Assembly: GCA_973895155.1 (NCBI GenBank)
Contig: OZ316898.1
Span: 2,207,927 to 2,271,926, forward strand
Length of the DNA stretch: 64,000 nt
Direction of reading: 5' to 3'
Origin: Marsupella aquatica
Lineage: Eukaryota; Plantae; Marchantiophyta
Shown: positions 28,573 to 38,492 of the stretch, piece after piece
Numbering within the stretch: the first letter of the stretch is position 1
Layout: each line of letters opens with the position of its first letter
The notes under the pieces: generated by a model
The model's input: the letters and a program-made list of their open reading frames with translations, nothing else
Databases searched by the model: none
Told to the model about the DNA's origin: nothing
Made by a program: the position numbers and the translations under genes

Positions 28573-29951
28573 TCAGAAACCCCTGCAGCATACACGAACA
28601 ATTACGTGTCAGAACCGGTGACAATTTTCGTTCCAGGATGGCTTCACTCATCAAACGTCACCCTTGCCTCCAGTCCAACTTCTAATAAAATCCACAAACT
28701 GCTATAAACCTCGTTCTACACACTGGAATCCTGCTCCTCTCCAGTCAAACCTAAAATGATCCACAGCCTCACTCTATTGTCTAAAGAGAGAAATAAATAT
28801 TAGGGATTCCTGGGATTCCTGCTATTGAAGTGAAGAATAAGACGAGCTATACAGTATGAGAGTATGGATTAAAATTGGGATCTACTTGGCAGTATATGCT
28901 ATGCTACCCAGATACAAAAATGGAAAAGAAAACCTGCGTGATTCTTCTGAAGCAAACTTCTTTCCTTCATATATTCATGATTTAGGGTGATAAGTGACCC
29001 TAAAGTCTAATTTGTCCCGTCCAGAGACCACACTATCGTTTTATGTTTGTGAAACGGAAATCACAACGGCCCGCAGCTGTCGTCTCGGCAAGTCAGTGGA
29101 GACCCAAACTTCGCCGAATATCTGGACATAGTTTCTGAAAATCGACAACTCACGGAACCTTTCACTGATTAAGACGCCATTTTCACTGAGATCATTCAGA
29201 GTCGTGAATCTATGAGGGAAAATGCACAAACGTCCATAGCTGCTGTACTGTCATCAGTATCTGCTTTTCCAGGTCATCTAGGATGAAAAGTTGGAGGCGT
29301 TAAAAGACACGAGCTGGGCTGGGCAGATCATTCTCACCTTTGTCGTCGATTTAAGATCCAGTTGAGCTTCATCTTGAAAGACCTCCTTGCAATCCGATGA
29401 TCCCTCTCCTTTAACGCAAGCACACGTTTCTCAGACGGCTTCTTGAAGTACTCCCGATCTTTCAATGCCTTCAAGTTCTCCTCCTTACATTTCCTCTTCC
29501 ACTTCCGAATCGCCCGGTCCAAATCGTTTCCCTTCACTTCAACGAAGATCTTCCGCACTTGCTGCCCTACTCCACCAGCTAATAATCCTCCACCACCAGC
29601 CATAAACTGCGGTACATTGCGTGATGATGGTGGTGGTGCTCCCCAACTGTGCAATCTCGAGGAGAAGTCCATCCCTCGAAATGCGGTGAAATGCCGTGGG
29701 CTAAAGATTTCTCCATCGCCAGAATCAGAATTTCTAGGGCGAGCACCGGCTACTGAAGAAGGAGGAGGAGGAGGAGATCTCCGGAGACCAGCAGCATCAT
29801 CAGCAATCAGCGTGGCAGCTGGGCTGCTACGCAGACTCACAACCAATTCGGAAAATCTTGCAACGGATTCGGAAATTACTCGCGCTTGATAAGCAATAAT
29901 CGACGATACGAGGGGATAAGCCGCTCGGCTGGTTGCGGATGGTGACGCCAT
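28573..29951 (-). CDS. Ribosomal protein bS21 family (mitochondrial-type), 2 exons
   Basis: Exon 29951-29338 encodes a long presequence-like N-terminus then VRKIFVEVKGNDLDRAIRKWKRK..LKDREYFKKPSEKRVLALKE..ILNRRQR. A 10-nt terminal coding exon, 28582-28573, gives ..RGF*, like the ..RGL* end of plant homologues. Confidence 0.85.
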
Positions 29952-30134
29952 GAAATCACTCGAGCTCAGTACCGACGCTACTGCAATACCATCCGCTTCA
30001 TCTGAGGTTGTCGCTCCTCCTGCTGCTGCTGATGATCGAGCTCGCCGAGCTCGAACCGATGAGAAACAATCAATTGCGAGAGATGTGGAGAGGAAATAGC
30101 ATCGGTGGTTTGCTGTTTCTTTGCAAAGAGGCAA

Positions 30135-31974: not shown

Positions 31975-32579
31975 TTAGAGTTAGTCGCACTTATTTTGTG
32001 CTAACATTATTTCCGCACACGTGAATTAGCGTTACTGTGGTCTCAACAATGGAAAAATAGAGGGGGAAAATGTATTTTGAAAAATTCACAAGAATTTAGT
32101 GTTACTATTGACTCAAGAGCATCCATTTTTGCTAGCAATTGAAACAAAAGTGGAAAAAAACTTGTATGTAAAACCCACCAAAATTAGTCTTAGTAACACT
32201 AATGTTGTACAAAAGCTAATTCTTGTACAACACTAGTTACCATGAACACCAGAACTATAGTGTAGCTTTAATTCACCTGAGTGTGGACCGGGTGCCCTGT
32301 CTCACCAGTTCTCTAGAATTAGTGGTAGTCACACTAATTTAGTGCTAACATTATTTTCGTGCACATGAATTAGTGTTACTCTGGTATCAACAATGGAAAA
32401 ATACAGGGGAAAAAACTACTTTGAAAAATTTACAAGAATTTAGTGTTACTATGGACCTAAAACAAAAATACATTAGTGTTTGTAACACTAATTTTGTACT
32501 AAAGCTAATTCATGCATAACACTAATTTTAATGTAGCTTTAATTCACCTAGGTGTTAACCGGGCGCCATGTCTCACCAG
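31975..32579. repeat. Two-copy tandem repeat (~340 and ~265 bp) overlapping the NLR stop codon
   Basis: GTGCTAACATTATTT..GAATTAG.GTTACT..TCAACAATGGAAAAATA..TTTGAAAAATT.ACAAGAATTTAGTGTTACTAT..TGTAGCTTTAATTCACCT..ACCGGG.GCC.TGTCTCACCAG occurs twice. Confidence 0.85.
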
Positions 32580-35500
32580 GGCATTTTCTCTGGTACCAAG
32601 TTCCCTCACACCAATCCAATATACGGTCATTATCACGAACAAAATAGTTTTCATGAGACTTAATCCAGCCTATTCCTTCCAGTACCGAGTCACTAAGGAA
32701 TGGACACCAATAAACATGTAGCCCGAATTTCTCCGTCGAAGCTCTCTTGCAGGAATGCCCACCTGCCGATCTTCTCGTCTCACTGCTTCTGTCTCCACCA
32801 CGTGATAAATTCCTTCCCAGACCATCTGGTAGACTCTTCAATTCGCTGCACTCGTCAAGTATCATGATTTTCAGGGACGACATGCTCCCCAAACTTTCCG
32901 GAAGAGTCTCCACATTTCGACAGTTTTGAATCCGAAGGATTTCTAGAGATCCAAGGTTTCCGAGTTCTTCTGGTAAACTGCTCCCCATATCCCCTATTAT
33001 AGTCAGCTTCTTCAGTGCTTGAAGCTGCCCTATGCTCGCCCGGAACCGTTGCAATGTATTCGCTGATATAAGCATACCTTCCAGTGACGAGAGGTTCCCC
33101 AATCGGTCCGGTAGCTCCTCACGGTGGTCGGCCTCGACTATGTGTAACGCCTTCAGAGCCAAGAGCTGGTTGAAATTATCTGGCAATCTTTGTAATCGTT
33201 TGCAGCTGATCAACTCCAGTTCTTGCAGGGCAGAGAGCAGACCAAAACTCTCAGGCAGTCTCACAAGACTCGGACAATGAGACAGACTCAGCGATGTCAG
33301 TGAAACTAAGTTCCTAAAGTCGTCTGGGAGCGCCTCTAGCTCCAAGGCCCCTTGTATCGTCAATTGTTCGAGAGCCATGAGTTGGCCGAAATTGTCAGGA
33401 AATCTATGTAATGCTTCACACTCTGATAATTCTAATGTTTGCAAGGCCGACAGATTCCCGAAACTTGCCGGCAATCTTCCAAGAAGCCTACAGCCATTGA
33501 GAAGCAAATTTCTCAGGGCAGGCAAATTCCCAAAGCTGTCAGGTAGGGCCTCCAGGTTCTCAGCGTCTATTATCCTCAAGCTTGTCAGAGCCTTGAATTG
33601 GCCAATGTTTTCCGGCAGCGTCTTTAGTTGCGTACACGCAATCAGCTCAAGTTTTCGCAGGGACGAAAGACGCTCAAAACTCGTAGGCAGCCTCTCTAGA
33701 CTGGAACAAGCGCGTAGAGATAGAGATGTGAGGGAAGATAAGTTCTCATGCAAGCCGAATTGTCTCACTTCTGTAGGCTCTTGACAGCTCAGGCTCGGGC
33801 ATTGCACAATGCGCAACTCGGTCAGCAAGGAGAGGTGACGGAAGGATTCAGGCAGACTTTCAAGTTTGCCACAATTAAGAATGAGTAATGTTGCCAGGGA
33901 AGAGAGATTCCCAAAAGATTTGGGTAGCTCAACGAGTTCTGGCATCCAGGATAAGAGCAGATGTTCGAGGGCCGAAAGGTTGCCAAATGAATGTGGCAGT
34001 GCAGTCAACCCGATATCAGTCAACTCCAACCGTTTCAGTTGGTACAGATGACCAAAATTGTCTGGCAGACGGGAAGGCCCGCGTATACTATCGAGAGATA
34101 AAATGCTCAGGTTTCTGAGCTTCCCCAACGGTGCGAGACTTTCCTCCGGCATCGCCCAGCATGCAAGCTGTAAGACAGCTAAATATTTCATGTCCTCCAG
34201 ACTGATAGGGAGGAGGGGCCGGTAGCGGGAAAACCGATGATAAGTGCATTTCAGTAGGCAAAGCTTCCTTGATAAGGTGTTGCTAGGCCCTTCAGGAAAA
34301 ATAAGAAGCAGCTCCAAATACTTTAATTTCTCCAACTTATCCAGCAGTTCGAACTGAAGCTTCGGGTTTTCTACAGGATCACCGTTCCAGAGTCGCAGAA
34401 TACTTGTTTGTGCTTGCACCTGTTGACAAAGTACATCTTCAATATAGCCTTCTTTAACCATTCCTGGACTATGTATTACCGTAAACTTGAAATTCAACCC
34501 CTTCAGAAACATAATTTGGGAATCTGCCGCTGCCAAGAAAACTCTACGAAACTCTTGGCATTTCTTTGAACAAATTGCATACTAAAAAATAACCAACACT
34601 TATTTTTGTGTACAGGTTTCTGGTTCAGTACTTACCGCATTTGCATTCAGAAGATCCAGTGCTCTGTGCCTTTTTCCAAGAGGCGTTGATATGATGGCCC
34701 CCTTCGAGAGATGATACGCCAAATCACGCAGCTGTTCATGCACCCATACTTCCTTGTACTTGATCTGCTTCCGCCAGGTATCATCCCATTCAGTCTTGTG
34801 GACTTCCTTCACCATGGATGTCCTCAGTAAGTTGGCCCACCTCGATTCTGAATCACCAAAAGCAGTGCTCCAAGCAGCTAGGGCTATCTCTACCGGCTCT
34901 TCAAAAAAATAAGTCCCAGCTTCGATGAACATTCCTTGCTCTTCGGGCGACAGAGCATCATAGCTCACTCTCAATGAACTCCACACTCTGTCATCTCGAA
35001 GTCCATCAACAGATTGAGCTCTGCCGAGCTTGTCTAATGTCTGCTTCCAGACCCTAGGATTAGTCTTGTGATCCCTCAGATAGCACCCCATTACTTCGAG
35101 CGTCAATGGCAAGCCGCCGCATTTCTCAACCACTTTCTTCACGTTTTCTTTCAAGTGACAATTCATAATTATAAGATCGTCCGGAATTTGTTTTTGCTGA
35201 AATGCATGCTGGCAAAAGAGCTGCTTCGCCTCGTAAAATTTGAGAACATCAACTTCGTAGATGGCACAATATCGAACAGTATTAAAAACGCCTTTATCAC
35301 GAGTGGTAAAAATCAGTCGACTGCCACTCCCAAACTCATCCAATCTAGGCAGATTTCTGACTTGGCTTTCCCTGTCCACATCATCCGCGGCGATCAGAAT
35401 TTTCTTCGTTTGAAGATCCGACCATCGCAATGAATTCTCGTCCACCCTAGTTCCATTTCGAAGAAAATGTTTGCGTACCCAATCCTTCAACTCGTGCACT

Positions 35501-38492
35501 TTCATGCCTTTGACATTGTCCACAAAACATGTGTATTCAAATTGTCGAGAGATCTTGTTAAACAGCTCCTTAGCAATGGTGGTTTTCCCGATGCCACCCA
35601 TACCCACAATTCCTAGAACGGGAGTAGTTGCTAACTTTTGTTGAACCTCGAAAACGCGCTTCTCCAAAGCCGTAGGGTAATCTGGGAGCCCATCCACAAT
35701 TGCCTGAATGATCGATACTATACGTTAAGTCAGATTTGATTATGTAAAGGAAGTTAAGAAAATTGTCTCGAGTGACAGAGAGGTGTCTTACAAACTTTCT
35801 TCCTGTTCCTTGCTGGGTGCACCTGTTGAAGCTACTTTATAATCAAATACTCCGTAGCCAGCAGAGGAACTCTAAAGTGTGTACAGTACTCATTTCTGAC
35901 CGTGGGACTCTCATGGAAGTGCCTGATTAGTGACTCATTGTGATAAATTCATACGGCGCATGCAATAACTCGGATCTTATCGAATGTCTTCTACTTATGT
36001 CCTACCAGAAGGTCTCTACAACGCCTGGAAGAAGCATATATAGTACACAATGCTAGGATTACAATTGACGTAGACTTGATGGGAAGGACAACTTTGACTT
36101 TGACTTGCCAAGCGGAACACACTAGTTTGAAGCATCTGGCCCGACTGGAAAGAATGAGAAATATGCCTACAGCAGTTGACTGCTTTTGAAATTAAAAGGC
36201 AAAACTTCTGTGCATGAACGTTTATTGTTTAAAGAATGGTTACCCAGGTGCTGTTGAGAAAGGACAAATTTTCATCAGCCAATGTACATCATTGTTTTTT
36301 CTCATGTTGGTGGCTGTCGATGCAGATATGAAACACATATTAACAGAAAGGTAAGTAATGTGCAGTAGAAAAAAATAACTCCAGCAAATACAATCTATTT
36401 CAGGGATCGAGATACTCCACCTTTGAATCAGCTGCAACGTCCTCAAGAAACTTTGTCAGGGTTAAGAAACTTCTACATGTCTTTCCCAGCGGTCTACAGA
36501 CAGAGATGTGGTCGGCTCTTTCCACAATGTTGAAACTAGTGCCATATCTTGCAGATGCTTCTTCAACAACTACATTACTAAAACTACCCTGCAAAAAAGT
36601 TAACCAACACGACATGTTACCGTCTATAGCATAACAAATCTCCTTCCTATGACTCTCATCGAGCCCTTGGCTGATCCTCTGCATGCTTCATGTGTCAACC
36701 AGCAGTAAACAGTAAACAAATGCTTTAGAGATATGAATGACAATGCAGTACTGAACCAAGTCAATATCACATGCGAATTCAATACCCTAAGTACCATATC
36801 ATGACCTCTCTGCGTGTGTCATCATGATTGATATCGTCGATTGCACTTTTGAAAGCTACTGTACGTTAATTAGTAATTCGATTCATACTACCTATAGAGA
36901 ATTATGTTGAGGATGCATGCACCTTCTATTCTGGAAATACTGTGTAGGACATTCGAGGATCATTTGACTCCACCGATCACGGTCTCAGGTTCAGAAAGTA
37001 TCCAGAACTCAAAATGTGGAGAATGATGTGCTTACCAATCTCGCCTATTTTACAATTCCAACGGCCCCAGGGCCATTTGACGCAACAAGCATTTAGGCAG
37101 AAGTACCTTAGGAAAAACCGTGGGAAGTGAAGTCCATTTTGTAGCCAAACTGGATACTTTGGACTAAATGCATGTGTAGACGATACTTTGGACTGAATGC
37201 AAACTACAATTGGCGAATATATAACTTTTTCATATCAATACTTTAAATTAAGTAGAAGTGGAACTACTTACTAATTTGGTTGGAAGACTTTCTCCGACTC
37301 CTGCAATTTGCCACATCTTGTATTGTCCATCTTGCCCGCAAAGATTGTCAAAATCAAAATTGACTCTTGCTTTTGGTGTACTAAGAGTTTTCACATATTC
37401 CAATAAAGGACGTTGAGTCACAAAATGTTCAGCTATGTGGTAGGAAACTCCTTGATGCGGTGTAGAATAGAAAAAAATCCCCTTTACATTTTCCAAAAAT
37501 GCAGTTAGCTGAAAGCTTTTCTCAGAGTTTCTCTTCAAGAGGCCTGTTGTCCTTGATGCATACACGCATATATCCTTTATGACCAAGCCCCCAAAGCTAT
37601 GACCAACCAATACGACAGGGCGGCAGGGTTCCTGTCCGACGTTTGCAGTCAGCAGATCCGAAGTCAGGTTCTCACTTATGAGATGCATGTCCATCGTTCC
37701 ACCTTCACAACTATCAATAACACTAGCATCGTAGGAAACAGACAGAATGCGGGCAGCAGGAAACTTCTCCACCAGCCAAGTTTGTGGCCAAATGGAGGAT
37801 CCGTCTCTACATTTCCATGTAGACAGACGGGCATCTTTATAATCCCCGTGTTGGAATCCATGGAAAAATAAGACGTCCATGCTTGGTTCGCCGGGCGGAC
37901 TATGCAATTCGTACACAGAGGAATTCAATTGAGACACCTGATAAGGCAAACCCAAATGGTCCGAGTTAATTCTCTGTGGACAATTTCGTACAATATGCGA
38001 AACCAGCTGGGACAAGATTGTATAAATTCTAGAGACGAGAGACTGAGACGCGTCACACACTGTAATCTTGCTACGCCTCTGGCAAAAGGAGCACAGTTTA
38101 GGTCCCAACGATGGAGAAAATTACACCAAACAACCATTGACAACCTAGTATAGATACATTTTAGACTTAAAGTCTATGGTTGAAAGTACCTGGACAAACC
38201 CCGCTGGGATTTTCGAGGTCAGACGGAGCAATTTATTTCCCCGGTGAAGCACGGCACTTGCAGCTACGCCTGCAGCTAGAGCCGCACAAGTTGCAAGAAC
38301 TGCAATGAGCCGGTTGAGAAAGCCCATGGCAATGCAACACAACAGGACTGTGCATAATGCAAGCATTACCATGAGCCGGTTCAGAAAACTCATAGCGATA
38401 CGGCGCAAACGTTGAAGAAAGCTCAGACCAAATCCTGCAGCGAGCTCCACAGCTACTTCACTGAAGTATCCGTTCGGAATGACTACAGACAT
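32548..38492 (-). CDS. alpha/beta-hydrolase-NB-ARC-LRR immune receptor (HNL) with N-terminal hydrophobic segments, ~1420 aa
   Basis: Exons 38492-38190 (hydrophobic); 37973 (or 38006)-37272 and 36588-36421 (SERAC1/DUF676-like hydrolase: VLFFHG, WPQTWL, RILSVSYD, GHSFGG, FYSTPHQG, DHISVCRP); 35703-34636 (NB-ARC: GMGGIGKTT, IAADDVD, GSGSRLIFTTRD, CGGLPLTL, VHEQLRDLA); ~34581-32548 (>20 24-aa LRRs). Exons join in phase 0. The LRR acceptor and possible microexons near 35800 and 36245 are uncertain. Confidence 0.9.

What the first reader, a model, noticed from the sequence alone, without database searches (positions are those of the whole stretch)
32548..38492. Putative membrane-anchored lipase-NLR: TM + alpha/beta-hydrolase + NB-ARC + LRR
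Seen: one spliced, uninterrupted frame joins a 101-aa first exon with two long hydrophobic stretches to a SERAC1/PGAP1-like hydrolase, a complete NB-ARC and >20 LRRs. The hydrolase keeps its nucleophile elbow (GHSFGG) and a His in the expected position (DHISVCRP). Established: hydrolase-NB-LRRs are a non-angiosperm NLR class known from liverworts, with poorly understood signalling, and SERAC1/PGAP1-type enzymes act on membrane lipids. Inference: this may be an immune receptor whose output is nucleotide-gated lipid hydrolysis or remodelling at a membrane it is tethered to, rather than TIR NADase or CC pore activity. I do not recall an N-terminal anchor being described for this class.
Basis: partly seen in the sequence, partly recalled or inferred. 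Interest (0 to 1): 0.85.

Follow-up and report, generated by a model that had tools for sequence, protein, structure and literature searches.

The report
Membrane-anchored lipase-type immune receptor gene
This is an intact liverwort hydrolase-NLR immune-receptor gene whose first exon adds a membrane-spanning helix that is conserved in its closest relatives and duplicated here, which suggests that this little-understood receptor class works as a lipase tethered to a membrane.

Summary
A five-exon minus-strand gene at 38492-32548 encodes a hydrophobic N-terminus, a DUF676/SERAC1-like alpha/beta-hydrolase, a complete NB-ARC and about 20 LRRs. All junctions are phase 0 and no exon has a stop.

Two splice sites differ from a simple ORF reading. 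Exon 2 starts at 37937, not 37973. Exon 5 starts at 34419.

The anchor looks real. Four Calypogeia fissa Hyd-NLR gene models begin with the same unit: MDFL, about 20 hydrophobic residues, a K/R-rich flank and the same intron. An intronless, transcript-like contig does too. Exon 2 has no usable ATG, so an upstream coding exon is required.

The second hydrophobic stretch is a window-specific 66-nt tandem duplication. Residues 1-33 correspond to the relatives' 5' leader, so translation may start at M1, M34 or M56. Each start keeps the conserved helix.

No RNA run was available for this gene. Lipid hydrolysis is inferred, not shown.

The receptor class is known; I found no description of the anchor.

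The parts
38190..38492 (-). Exon 1 (101 aa from M1). In-frame ATGs at 38492 (M1, weak context tcctgaATGT), 38393 (M34, atcgctATGA) and 38327 (M56, attgccATGG). The donor CAG|GTAC follows 38190.
   Evidence: A TGA stands directly upstream of M1.
38394..38492 (-). Residues 1-33. The stretch next to M34 is homologous to the 5' leader of the Calypogeia paralogues, so these residues may not be translated.
   Evidence: the leader TTTGYGCCRTATCGCT|ATGGA is shared; the relatives have in-frame stops at this position.
38316..38375 (-). Hydrophobic helix 1 (aa 40-59, LMVMLALCTVLLCCIAMGFL). It belongs to the window-specific duplicated 66-nt unit.
   Evidence: KD19 2.65, dG -3.5.
38247..38309 (-). Hydrophobic helix 2 (aa 62-82, LIAVLATCAALAAGVAASAVL). 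This is the conserved anchor shared with P0004, P0152, P0153, P0154 and P0017.
38211..38246 (-). Basic flank HRGNKLLRLTSK on the C-terminal side of the anchor. By the positive-inside rule it should be cytosolic.
   Evidence: alignment: KRRNKLxRL is conserved in the relatives.
37938..38189 (-). Intron 1 (252 nt, phase 0, GT..AG). The four Calypogeia loci have an intron at the same position, about 225-270 nt long.
37272..37937 (-). Exon 2 (222 aa): the main part of the alpha/beta-hydrolase. It holds LNSSVYEL (37928-37905), the FFHGF oxyanion motif (37868-37854), the GHSFGG nucleophile elbow (37604-37587), TPHQG (37463-37449) and GVGE with the candidate catalytic Glu (37301-37290).
36421..36588 (-). 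Exon 3 (56 aa): the end of the hydrolase with ADHISVCRP (36516-36490, catalytic His) and the linker helix.
34636..35703 (-). Exon 4 (356 aa): NB-ARC with P-loop GMGGIGKTT (35604-35578), Walker B ILIAADDV (35400-35377), GGLPL (35118-35104) and the MHD-like VHE within WVHEQL (34746-34729).
32548..34419 (-). Exon 5 (623 aa plus stop): about 20 LRRs of 24 aa and a C-terminal tail of about 90 aa that aligns to the ends of the relatives.

Best explanation
This is an intact gene for a bryophyte-type hydrolase-NLR (Hyd-NLR, also called HNL) from a leafy liverwort close to Calypogeia. Its N-terminus carries a signal-anchor-type transmembrane helix.

Shown:
- The five-exon structure and the three domains.
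- Retention of the family's conserved Ser, Glu and His.
- Conservation of the anchor exon and its intron in the nearest clade.
- The origin of the second hydrophobic stretch by a 66-nt tandem duplication that took about 16 nt of 5' leader with it.

Inferred:
- The K/R-rich flank after the helix keeps the hydrolase, NB-ARC and LRR in the cytosol. The topology would be N-out/C-in with one helix, or a hairpin with both ends in the cytosol if both helices are translated.
- The lipase-like domain would then sit against the cytosolic face of a membrane.
- Ligand sensing by the LRR and nucleotide exchange in the NB-ARC would drive oligomerisation. That would bring the tethered hydrolase domains together and switch on phospholipase or esterase activity on that membrane. 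The result would be membrane damage or lipid signals and cell death.
For: Domains and motifs.

Clade placement: the window sits in a clade of 8 with SH-aLRT 99, alongside Calypogeia fissa Hyd-NLRs (quick IQ-TREE tree; names).

Anchor:
- P0004, P0152, P0153 and P0154 start with MDF[LW], a hydrophobic helix and a basic flank. They have the same CAG|GTAC donor and YCAG|GTG acceptor as the window.
- BLASTP of exon 1 residues 56-97 against P0152 gives 57% identity, E 9e-9.
- dN/dS against L001, L002 and L004 is 0.27-0.41, and all indels are multiples of three.
- There is no in-frame ATG between the stop at 38111-38109 and the family-conserved LNSSVYEL, so an upstream coding exon is needed.
- L005, an intronless 2660-nt contig, encodes the anchor and the hydrolase in one ORF. 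It behaves like a spliced mRNA of a relative.

Enzyme:
- In the AF2 model of P0017 (54% identical to exon 2) the hydrolase has pLDDT above 90. Ser follows beta5, Glu ends beta7 and His follows beta8.
- NCBI names a Marchantia relative 'protein SERAC1'.

Function of the class: two Marchantia Hyd domains cause HR-like cell death and ion leakage in Nicotiana benthamiana (PMC11218826).
Against: - There is no RNA evidence for this gene. All four runs are DNA contigs.
- The Calypogeia models are automatic annotations.
- dN/dS rests on only 39-43 codons. Against L003 it is 0.66, and between L003 and the other Calypogeia paralogues it is 0.73-0.90.
- Hydrophobicity was scored with simple scales, not with a dedicated topology predictor.
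- AF2 on exon 1 alone gives one continuous helix (residues 9-92) and says nothing about membrane insertion.
- Most of the 158 relatives surveyed (83) show no anchor in their models.
- Triad geometry could not be measured because no coordinates are returned. It was read from a relative's model, not from the window's own protein.
- No substrate is known for any plant Hyd domain.
Confidence: 0.62

Rival explanations
1. It is an ordinary soluble Hyd-NLR. The hydrophobic exon is not part of the mature message or is not translated. The open frame is a by-product of a leader duplication, and the Calypogeia models carry it only because gene callers needed an ATG.
For: No RNA support. Residues 1-33 match leader sequence. 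83 of 158 relatives have no anchor in their models. dN/dS against L003 is 0.66, and 0.73-0.90 between L003 and the other Calypogeia paralogues.
Against: Exon 2 has no in-frame ATG upstream of the conserved LNSSVYEL, so some upstream coding exon is required. The ATG, the helix, the basic flank and the phase-0 intron are conserved in five genomic loci, with in-frame indels only. The intronless contig L005 joins the anchor to the hydrolase.
Confidence: 0.12
2. The protein is membrane-anchored, but the hydrolase is a non-catalytic scaffold or lipid or small-molecule binding module, as the lipase-like domain of EDS1 is. Signalling would run through protein partners, not lipid hydrolysis.
For: No enzymatic activity has been shown for any plant Hyd-NLR domain (PMC10952240). 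The acid residue is Glu, not Asp. Lipase-like but inactive signalling domains exist in plant immunity (EDS1; my own knowledge).
Against: In the 50-sequence family alignment, the Gly and His just before the nucleophile, the two Gly after it, the Glu of GxGE and the His of ADH are conserved in at least 90% of sequences. The consensus at the nucleophile itself is Ser, but it falls below 90%. The HG oxyanion motif is invariant. The window keeps all of these residues. That pattern is what purifying selection on catalysis would give.
Confidence: 0.18
3. The N-terminal hydrophobic segment is a secretion signal or type II anchor that places the hydrolase, and so the whole protein, in the ER lumen or outside the cell.
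For: It is a hydrophobic N-terminus after only about 6 residues. The relative P0017 couples the same anchor and hydrolase to a B_lectin domain, a domain that is often extracellular.
Against: The hydrophobic core is 20-22 residues long. It is followed by a cluster of 4-5 K/R and no small-residue cleavage motif. By the positive-inside rule that favours an uncleaved anchor with the C-terminal side in the cytosol. NB-ARC-LRR modules are cytosolic ATP-dependent switches (established knowledge).
Confidence: 0.05

Closest known systems
Bryophyte hydrolase-NLRs (HNL of Xue et al. 2012, PMC3352924; Hyd-NLR of Chia et al. 2024, PMC11218826)
   Same: [quoted passage not shown] There are introns at the domain boundaries. 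The gene is of liverwort origin and falls inside a clade of Calypogeia Hyd-NLRs.
   Different: It has an extra N-terminal exon that encodes a transmembrane helix, duplicated here. Neither paper mentions such an anchor.
Fungal sesB-like NLRs and human SERAC1 (Dyrka et al. 2014, PMC4986451)
   Same: A lipase or esterase-type alpha/beta-hydrolase serves as the N-terminal effector of a STAND/NLR protein. That paper links the bryophyte domain to sesB.
   Different: The fungal proteins use NACHT or NB-ARC with WD40, ANK or TPR repeats. I did not test sequence homology to sesB or SERAC1 directly, and no anchor is described for them there.
Neurospora crassa PLP-1, a patatin-phospholipase NLR (Heller et al. 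2018, as cited in PMC10952240)
   Same: The logic is that of an NLR whose N-terminal domain is a lipid hydrolase tied to cell death.
   Different: The fold is unrelated (patatin, not alpha/beta-hydrolase). The repeats differ, and it has no transmembrane anchor.
Legionella pneumophila phospholipase PlaB (PDB 6zth, 6zti)
   Different: It is a bacterial virulence enzyme with its own C-terminal domain. phmmer found no sequence-level match in the PDB. Its acid residue is Asp (my own knowledge), whereas this family has Glu.
N-terminally anchored lipases ABHD6 and Pseudomonas PlaF (PDB 7ots, 6i8w)
   Same: Both appear among the top Foldseek matches. In both, a single N-terminal helix holds an alpha/beta-hydrolase lipase at the membrane face (my own knowledge).
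   Different: They are stand-alone enzymes with no NB-ARC-LRR switch. The resemblance is at the level of fold only.
N-acylated angiosperm CC-NLRs such as RPS5 (my own knowledge)
   Same: These are NLRs held at a membrane through their N-terminus. Several Hyd-NLR relatives have MGxxxS/T or MGC starts.
   Different: They use lipid modification, not a transmembrane helix, and their executioner domain is a CC domain, not an enzyme.

Membership tests
Hyd-NLR / HNL class | Alpha/beta-hydrolase domain N-terminal to the NB-ARC | tested here: met
   DUF676 at 24.3 bits, above the 20.3 cut-off, on exon 2. Exons 2 and 3 align end to end with the family's hydrolase.
Hyd-NLR / HNL class | Complete NB-ARC with P-loop, Walker B, GLPL and MHD-like motifs | tested here: met
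   PF00931 at E 1.6e-32 covering profile 3-247 of 248. Motifs located.
Hyd-NLR / HNL class | C-terminal leucine-rich repeats | tested here: met
   LRR_14 at E 1.7e-44. Twelve strict and about eight degenerate 24-aa repeats.
Hyd-NLR / HNL class | Groups with bryophyte Hyd-NLRs in a tree | tested here: met
   The hydrolase part falls in a clade of 8 Calypogeia proteins with SH-aLRT 99 (quick IQ-TREE search only).
Hyd-NLR / HNL class | Class-specific intron positions and phases (Xue et al. 2012) | tested here: inconclusive
   Phase-0 introns are present at the Hyd/NB and NB/LRR boundaries. The paper's figure is not available for a position-by-position comparison.
DUF676 / SERAC1-like serine esterase (PF05057) | Pfam score above the gathering cut-off | tested here: met
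   24.3 against 20.3 bits on exon 2. Relatives score 24-40 bits.
DUF676 / SERAC1-like serine esterase (PF05057) | GxSxG nucleophile, acid and His in canonical positions | tested here: met
   GHSFGG, GVGE and ADHIS are present. Most flanking columns are conserved in at least 90% of 50 relatives. Positions after beta5, beta7 and beta8 were read from the AF2 model of P0017. Inter-residue distances were not measurable.
PGAP1-like (PF07819) | Pfam score above the gathering cut-off | tested here: not met
   17.4 against 24.3 bits, over a 30-residue stretch around the nucleophile only.
Signal-anchor (Nexo/Ccyt or hairpin) membrane protein | Hydrophobic segment of 19 residues or more, strong enough to insert | tested here: met
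   KD19 2.65 with dG -3.5 for residues 40-59. KD19 2.18 with dG about 0.1-0.4 for residues 62-82. Simple scales only.
Signal-anchor (Nexo/Ccyt or hairpin) membrane protein | Charge bias that fixes the topology (positive-inside) | tested here: met
   HRGNKLLRLTSK follows the helix, against MGFLNR before it. The relatives show the same bias.
Signal-anchor (Nexo/Ccyt or hairpin) membrane protein | Call by a dedicated predictor (DeepTMHMM, Phobius, SignalP), or experimental insertion | not testable with these tools
   No such predictor is offered. AF2 on exon 1 gives one helix over residues 9-92.
Signal-anchor (Nexo/Ccyt or hairpin) membrane protein | The segment is present in the mature mRNA | tested here: inconclusive
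   No RNA run is available for this gene. There is indirect support from the intronless contig L005 of a relative and from the missing ATG in exon 2.

The most novel reading that the evidence does not exclude
Membrane residence may be a general, so far unreported property of hydrolase-NLRs and of the stand-alone DUF676 hydrolases they derive from. It would be reached repeatedly by different means:
- a transmembrane helix in the Calypogeia clade, in the moss Ceratodon NLR P0124, and in stand-alone enzymes P0057 and P0094;
- MGxxxS/T or MGC acylation-type starts in Riccia, Calypogeia and Marchantia members.

If so, these receptors would execute immunity as resistosome-activated phospholipases acting on the membrane that holds them. 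That would be a third plant NLR output beside TIR NADase activity and CC channels.
Probability: 0.25. Interest if true: 0.8.

Novelty: new variant of a known kind. Interest (0 to 1): 0.58.

Why it matters
Hyd-NLRs are the main atypical NLR class of liverworts, and nobody knows how their hydrolase domain signals. A conserved N-terminal membrane anchor would say where the enzyme acts: at the cytosolic face of a membrane. Together with the phospholipase-like fold, it narrows the substrate search to membrane lipids.

It also gives a simple handle for experiments, namely deleting the anchor, mutating the Ser, and localisation. The window's gene is a natural variant with a duplicated helix. Comparing it with single-helix paralogues could show how anchor geometry affects function.

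Tried and rejected
**RNA evidence.** The look-up of sequencing runs found only four runs, all kept as DNA-type contigs that also cover the introns. Read laying showed no splice joints at the exon borders. The joints it listed do not match any GT..AG intron of the model.

**Exon 1 family searches.** Pfam found nothing. The protein atlas gave no usable hit.

**Sequence search of the hydrolase against the PDB.** Nothing was found at E up to 1.

**Tandem Repeats Finder on exon 1.** It gave no rows. The 66-nt duplication is too diverged and only showed up by alignment with the relatives' leaders. A repeat finder failed because I gave the wrong strand, and I did not repeat it.

**DNA identity of exon 1 against intron 1 between paralogues.** It did not discriminate: 0.54-0.70 for the exon against 0.62-0.70 for the intron (shuffled control 0.50; the near-identical L001/L004 pair left out). 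I used reading-frame retention and dN/dS instead.

**Splice sites rejected.**
- For exon 5, acceptors at 34563 and 34529 were rejected. Relatives have no residues matching 34635-34420.

**Paralogues in the window.** tblastn with each exon found none.

**Careful tree search.** It did not finish in the time allowed, so the quick tree is reported.

**Joined protein.** The window's own complete hydrolase (exons 2 plus 3) and the full-length protein therefore have no model of their own.
Full report
**What is there**

The minus strand between 38492 and 32548 carries five open exon pieces. I searched them separately by reference.
- Exon 2 matches DUF676 at 24.3 bits (cut-off 20.3). Abhydrolase_6 and PGAP1 score below their cut-offs.
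- Exon 4 matches NB-ARC at E 1.6e-32 over profile positions 3-247 of 248.
- Exon 5 matches several LRR families, with LRR_14 at E 1.7e-44.
- Exon 1 matches no family.
- tblastn with each exon found no second copy in the window.
- Of the six largest other ORFs in the window, only one matched a Pfam family, Ribosomal_S21; none is NLR-related.

**Gene model**

I fixed the splice sites by homology, because no RNA was available. The only public runs that hold the stretch are DNA contigs that also cover the introns.
- Exon 1 runs from 38492 to 38190, with donor CAG|GTAC.
- Exon 2 starts at 37937, after TTATCAG. Four Calypogeia fissa loci (L001-L004) have the same donor and the same YCAG|GTG acceptor at the homologous place, with introns of about 225-270 nt.
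- Exon 2 ends at 37272. Exon 3 is 36588-36421. Exon 4 is 35703-34636.
- Exon 5 starts at 34419. Relatives P0154 and P0152 pass directly from the end of exon 4 to that point, and they align to within about 10 residues of the stop at 32548.
- All junctions are phase 0 and no exon has a stop.
- The product would be 1358, 1325 or 1303 residues, depending on the start codon.

**Hydrolase**

A full scan of 1.84 billion representatives with exon 2 gave 2943 hits. The nearest named ones are unnamed products of the leafy liverwort Calypogeia fissa (58-68% identity). Riccia, Marchantia and the moss Ceratodon follow. NCBI calls one Marchantia stand-alone relative 'protein SERAC1', and UniRef calls it 'DUF676 domain-containing'.

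Aligned separately to a family profile, exons 2 and 3 fit without gaps at their junction. They keep FFHGF, GHSFGG, TPHQG, GVGE and ADHISVCRP. In a 50-sequence alignment, most of these columns are conserved in at least 90% of sequences, or are invariant.

An AlphaFold2 model of relative P0017 (54% identical to exon 2) has pLDDT above 90 across the hydrolase. It places the Ser after beta5, the Glu at the end of beta7 and the His after beta8. No coordinates are returned, so I could not measure distances.

**NB-ARC and LRR**

The P-loop GMGGIGKTT, Walker B ILIAADDV, GGLPL and an MHD-like VHE are all present. The LRR region has 12 strict 24-residue repeats and about eight degenerate ones.

**The anchor**

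Simple hydropathy scales give two strong stretches in exon 1:
- residues 40-59, with KD19 2.65 and a summed Hessa dG of -3.5;
- residues 62-82, with KD19 2.18 and dG about 0.1-0.4.

Five lines of evidence say the exon is coding.
1. P0004, P0152, P0153 and P0154 begin with MDF[LW], about 20 hydrophobic residues and a K/R-rich flank. Exon 1 residues 56-97 match P0152 at 57% identity, E 9e-9.
2. In a codon alignment every indel is a multiple of three. dN/dS between the window and L001, L002 and L004 is 0.27-0.41. Against L003 it is 0.66, and there are only 39-43 codons.
3. The window falls in a clade of eight with SH-aLRT 99. Five of its seven full-length members, the window included, carry this exon.
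4. There is no in-frame ATG between the stop at 38111-38109 and the family-conserved LNSSVYEL, so translation must start in an upstream exon.
5. L005 is a 2660-nt contig from a public run that encodes P0017, anchor plus hydrolase, in one uninterrupted ORF. It lacks both introns that all five genomic loci have, as a spliced mRNA would.

DNA identity alone did not separate exon 1 from intron 1.

**The duplication**

The Calypogeia loci share the leader TTTGYGCCRTATCGCT directly before ATGGATTT. In the window this leader-plus-start unit occurs twice, before M34 and before M56, 66 nt apart. The first hydrophobic stretch is therefore a window-specific in-frame tandem duplication of the ancestral start region.

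Residues 1-33 lie where the relatives have 5' leader with in-frame stops. The context of M1 is weak (T at -3 and at +4). M34 has G at -3. M56 has the strong GCCATGG. Any of the three starts keeps the conserved helix at residues 62-82.

AlphaFold2 on exon 1 alone gives a single helix over residues 9-92. This does not settle whether the two stretches form a hairpin.

**Topology and mechanism (inference)**

The basic cluster after the helix should stay in the cytosol. The cluster is HRGNKLLRLTSK in the window and KRRNKLxRL in the relatives. The hydrolase, NB-ARC and LRR would then be cytosolic and held against a membrane.

I propose that activation and oligomerisation bring the tethered hydrolase domains together and switch on lipid hydrolysis. 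Published work shows only that two Marchantia Hyd domains cause HR-like death and ion leakage in Nicotiana benthamiana (PMC11218826). The authors state that the biochemistry is unknown (PMC10952240).

**Wider pattern**

I classified the 158 relatives in hand by their N-termini.
- 10 are TM-like, including the Ceratodon NLR P0124 and stand-alone hydrolases P0057, P0151 and P0094.
- 13 start with MG, and about 8 of these fit MGxxxS/T.
- 9 have a Cys within the first eight residues.
- 83 show no anchor, but short first exons are easily missed by gene callers.

I did not check it.

**Novelty**

The class has been known since 2012 (PMC3352924). Its link to fungal sesB/SERAC1-type domains has been noted (PMC4986451). 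Transmembrane signatures were reported for algal NLR-like proteins (PMC7145615).

I found no description of an N-terminal transmembrane anchor in Hyd-NLRs. The search library does not cover most subscription-journal papers.

I rate this a new variant of a known kind. Interest is moderate to fairly high, limited by the lack of transcript and biochemical evidence.

Noticed in passing
L005:468-2177 (protein P0017): A relative couples the same N-terminal anchor and hydrolase to a D-mannose-binding B_lectin domain (E 1.1e-15) in place of NB-ARC-LRR. It sits on an intronless, transcript-like contig with a leader of at least 455 nt that holds several upstream ATGs.
   Followed up: partly
Relatives P0010, P0066, P0020, P0014, P0045/P0159, P0117, P0149: Several Hyd-NLRs and stand-alone DUF676 hydrolases of Calypogeia, Riccia, Marchantia and Ceratodon start with MGxxxS/T or MGC. 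These look like N-myristoylation or palmitoylation signals, a second route to the membrane in the same family.
   Followed up: partly
window 33730-33929: Summed contig depth in the laid DNA runs rises more than tenfold here (6282 in X3, against about 200-600 in most other bins). This lies within the LRR region. It is probably an LRR segment shared by many paralogues or a repeat.
   Followed up: no
window 29337-30134 (-): An ORF with a Ribosomal_S21 match (E 7e-10) lies downstream of the NLR gene. None of the five other large ORFs searched in the window matched a Pfam family.
   Followed up: no
window 32548-32820 (-): The last 90 or so residues after the LRRs (GRNLSRGG...WRPVNT) align to the C-termini of the Calypogeia relatives. 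This suggests a conserved post-LRR tail of unknown function.
   Followed up: no
Relatives P0002 and P0155: Two members of the same 8-protein clade lack the transmembrane exon. One starts with MKCCFGG (a possible palmitoylation site) and the other with MKRWFPG. This hints at a swap or loss of the first exon within the clade.
   Followed up: no
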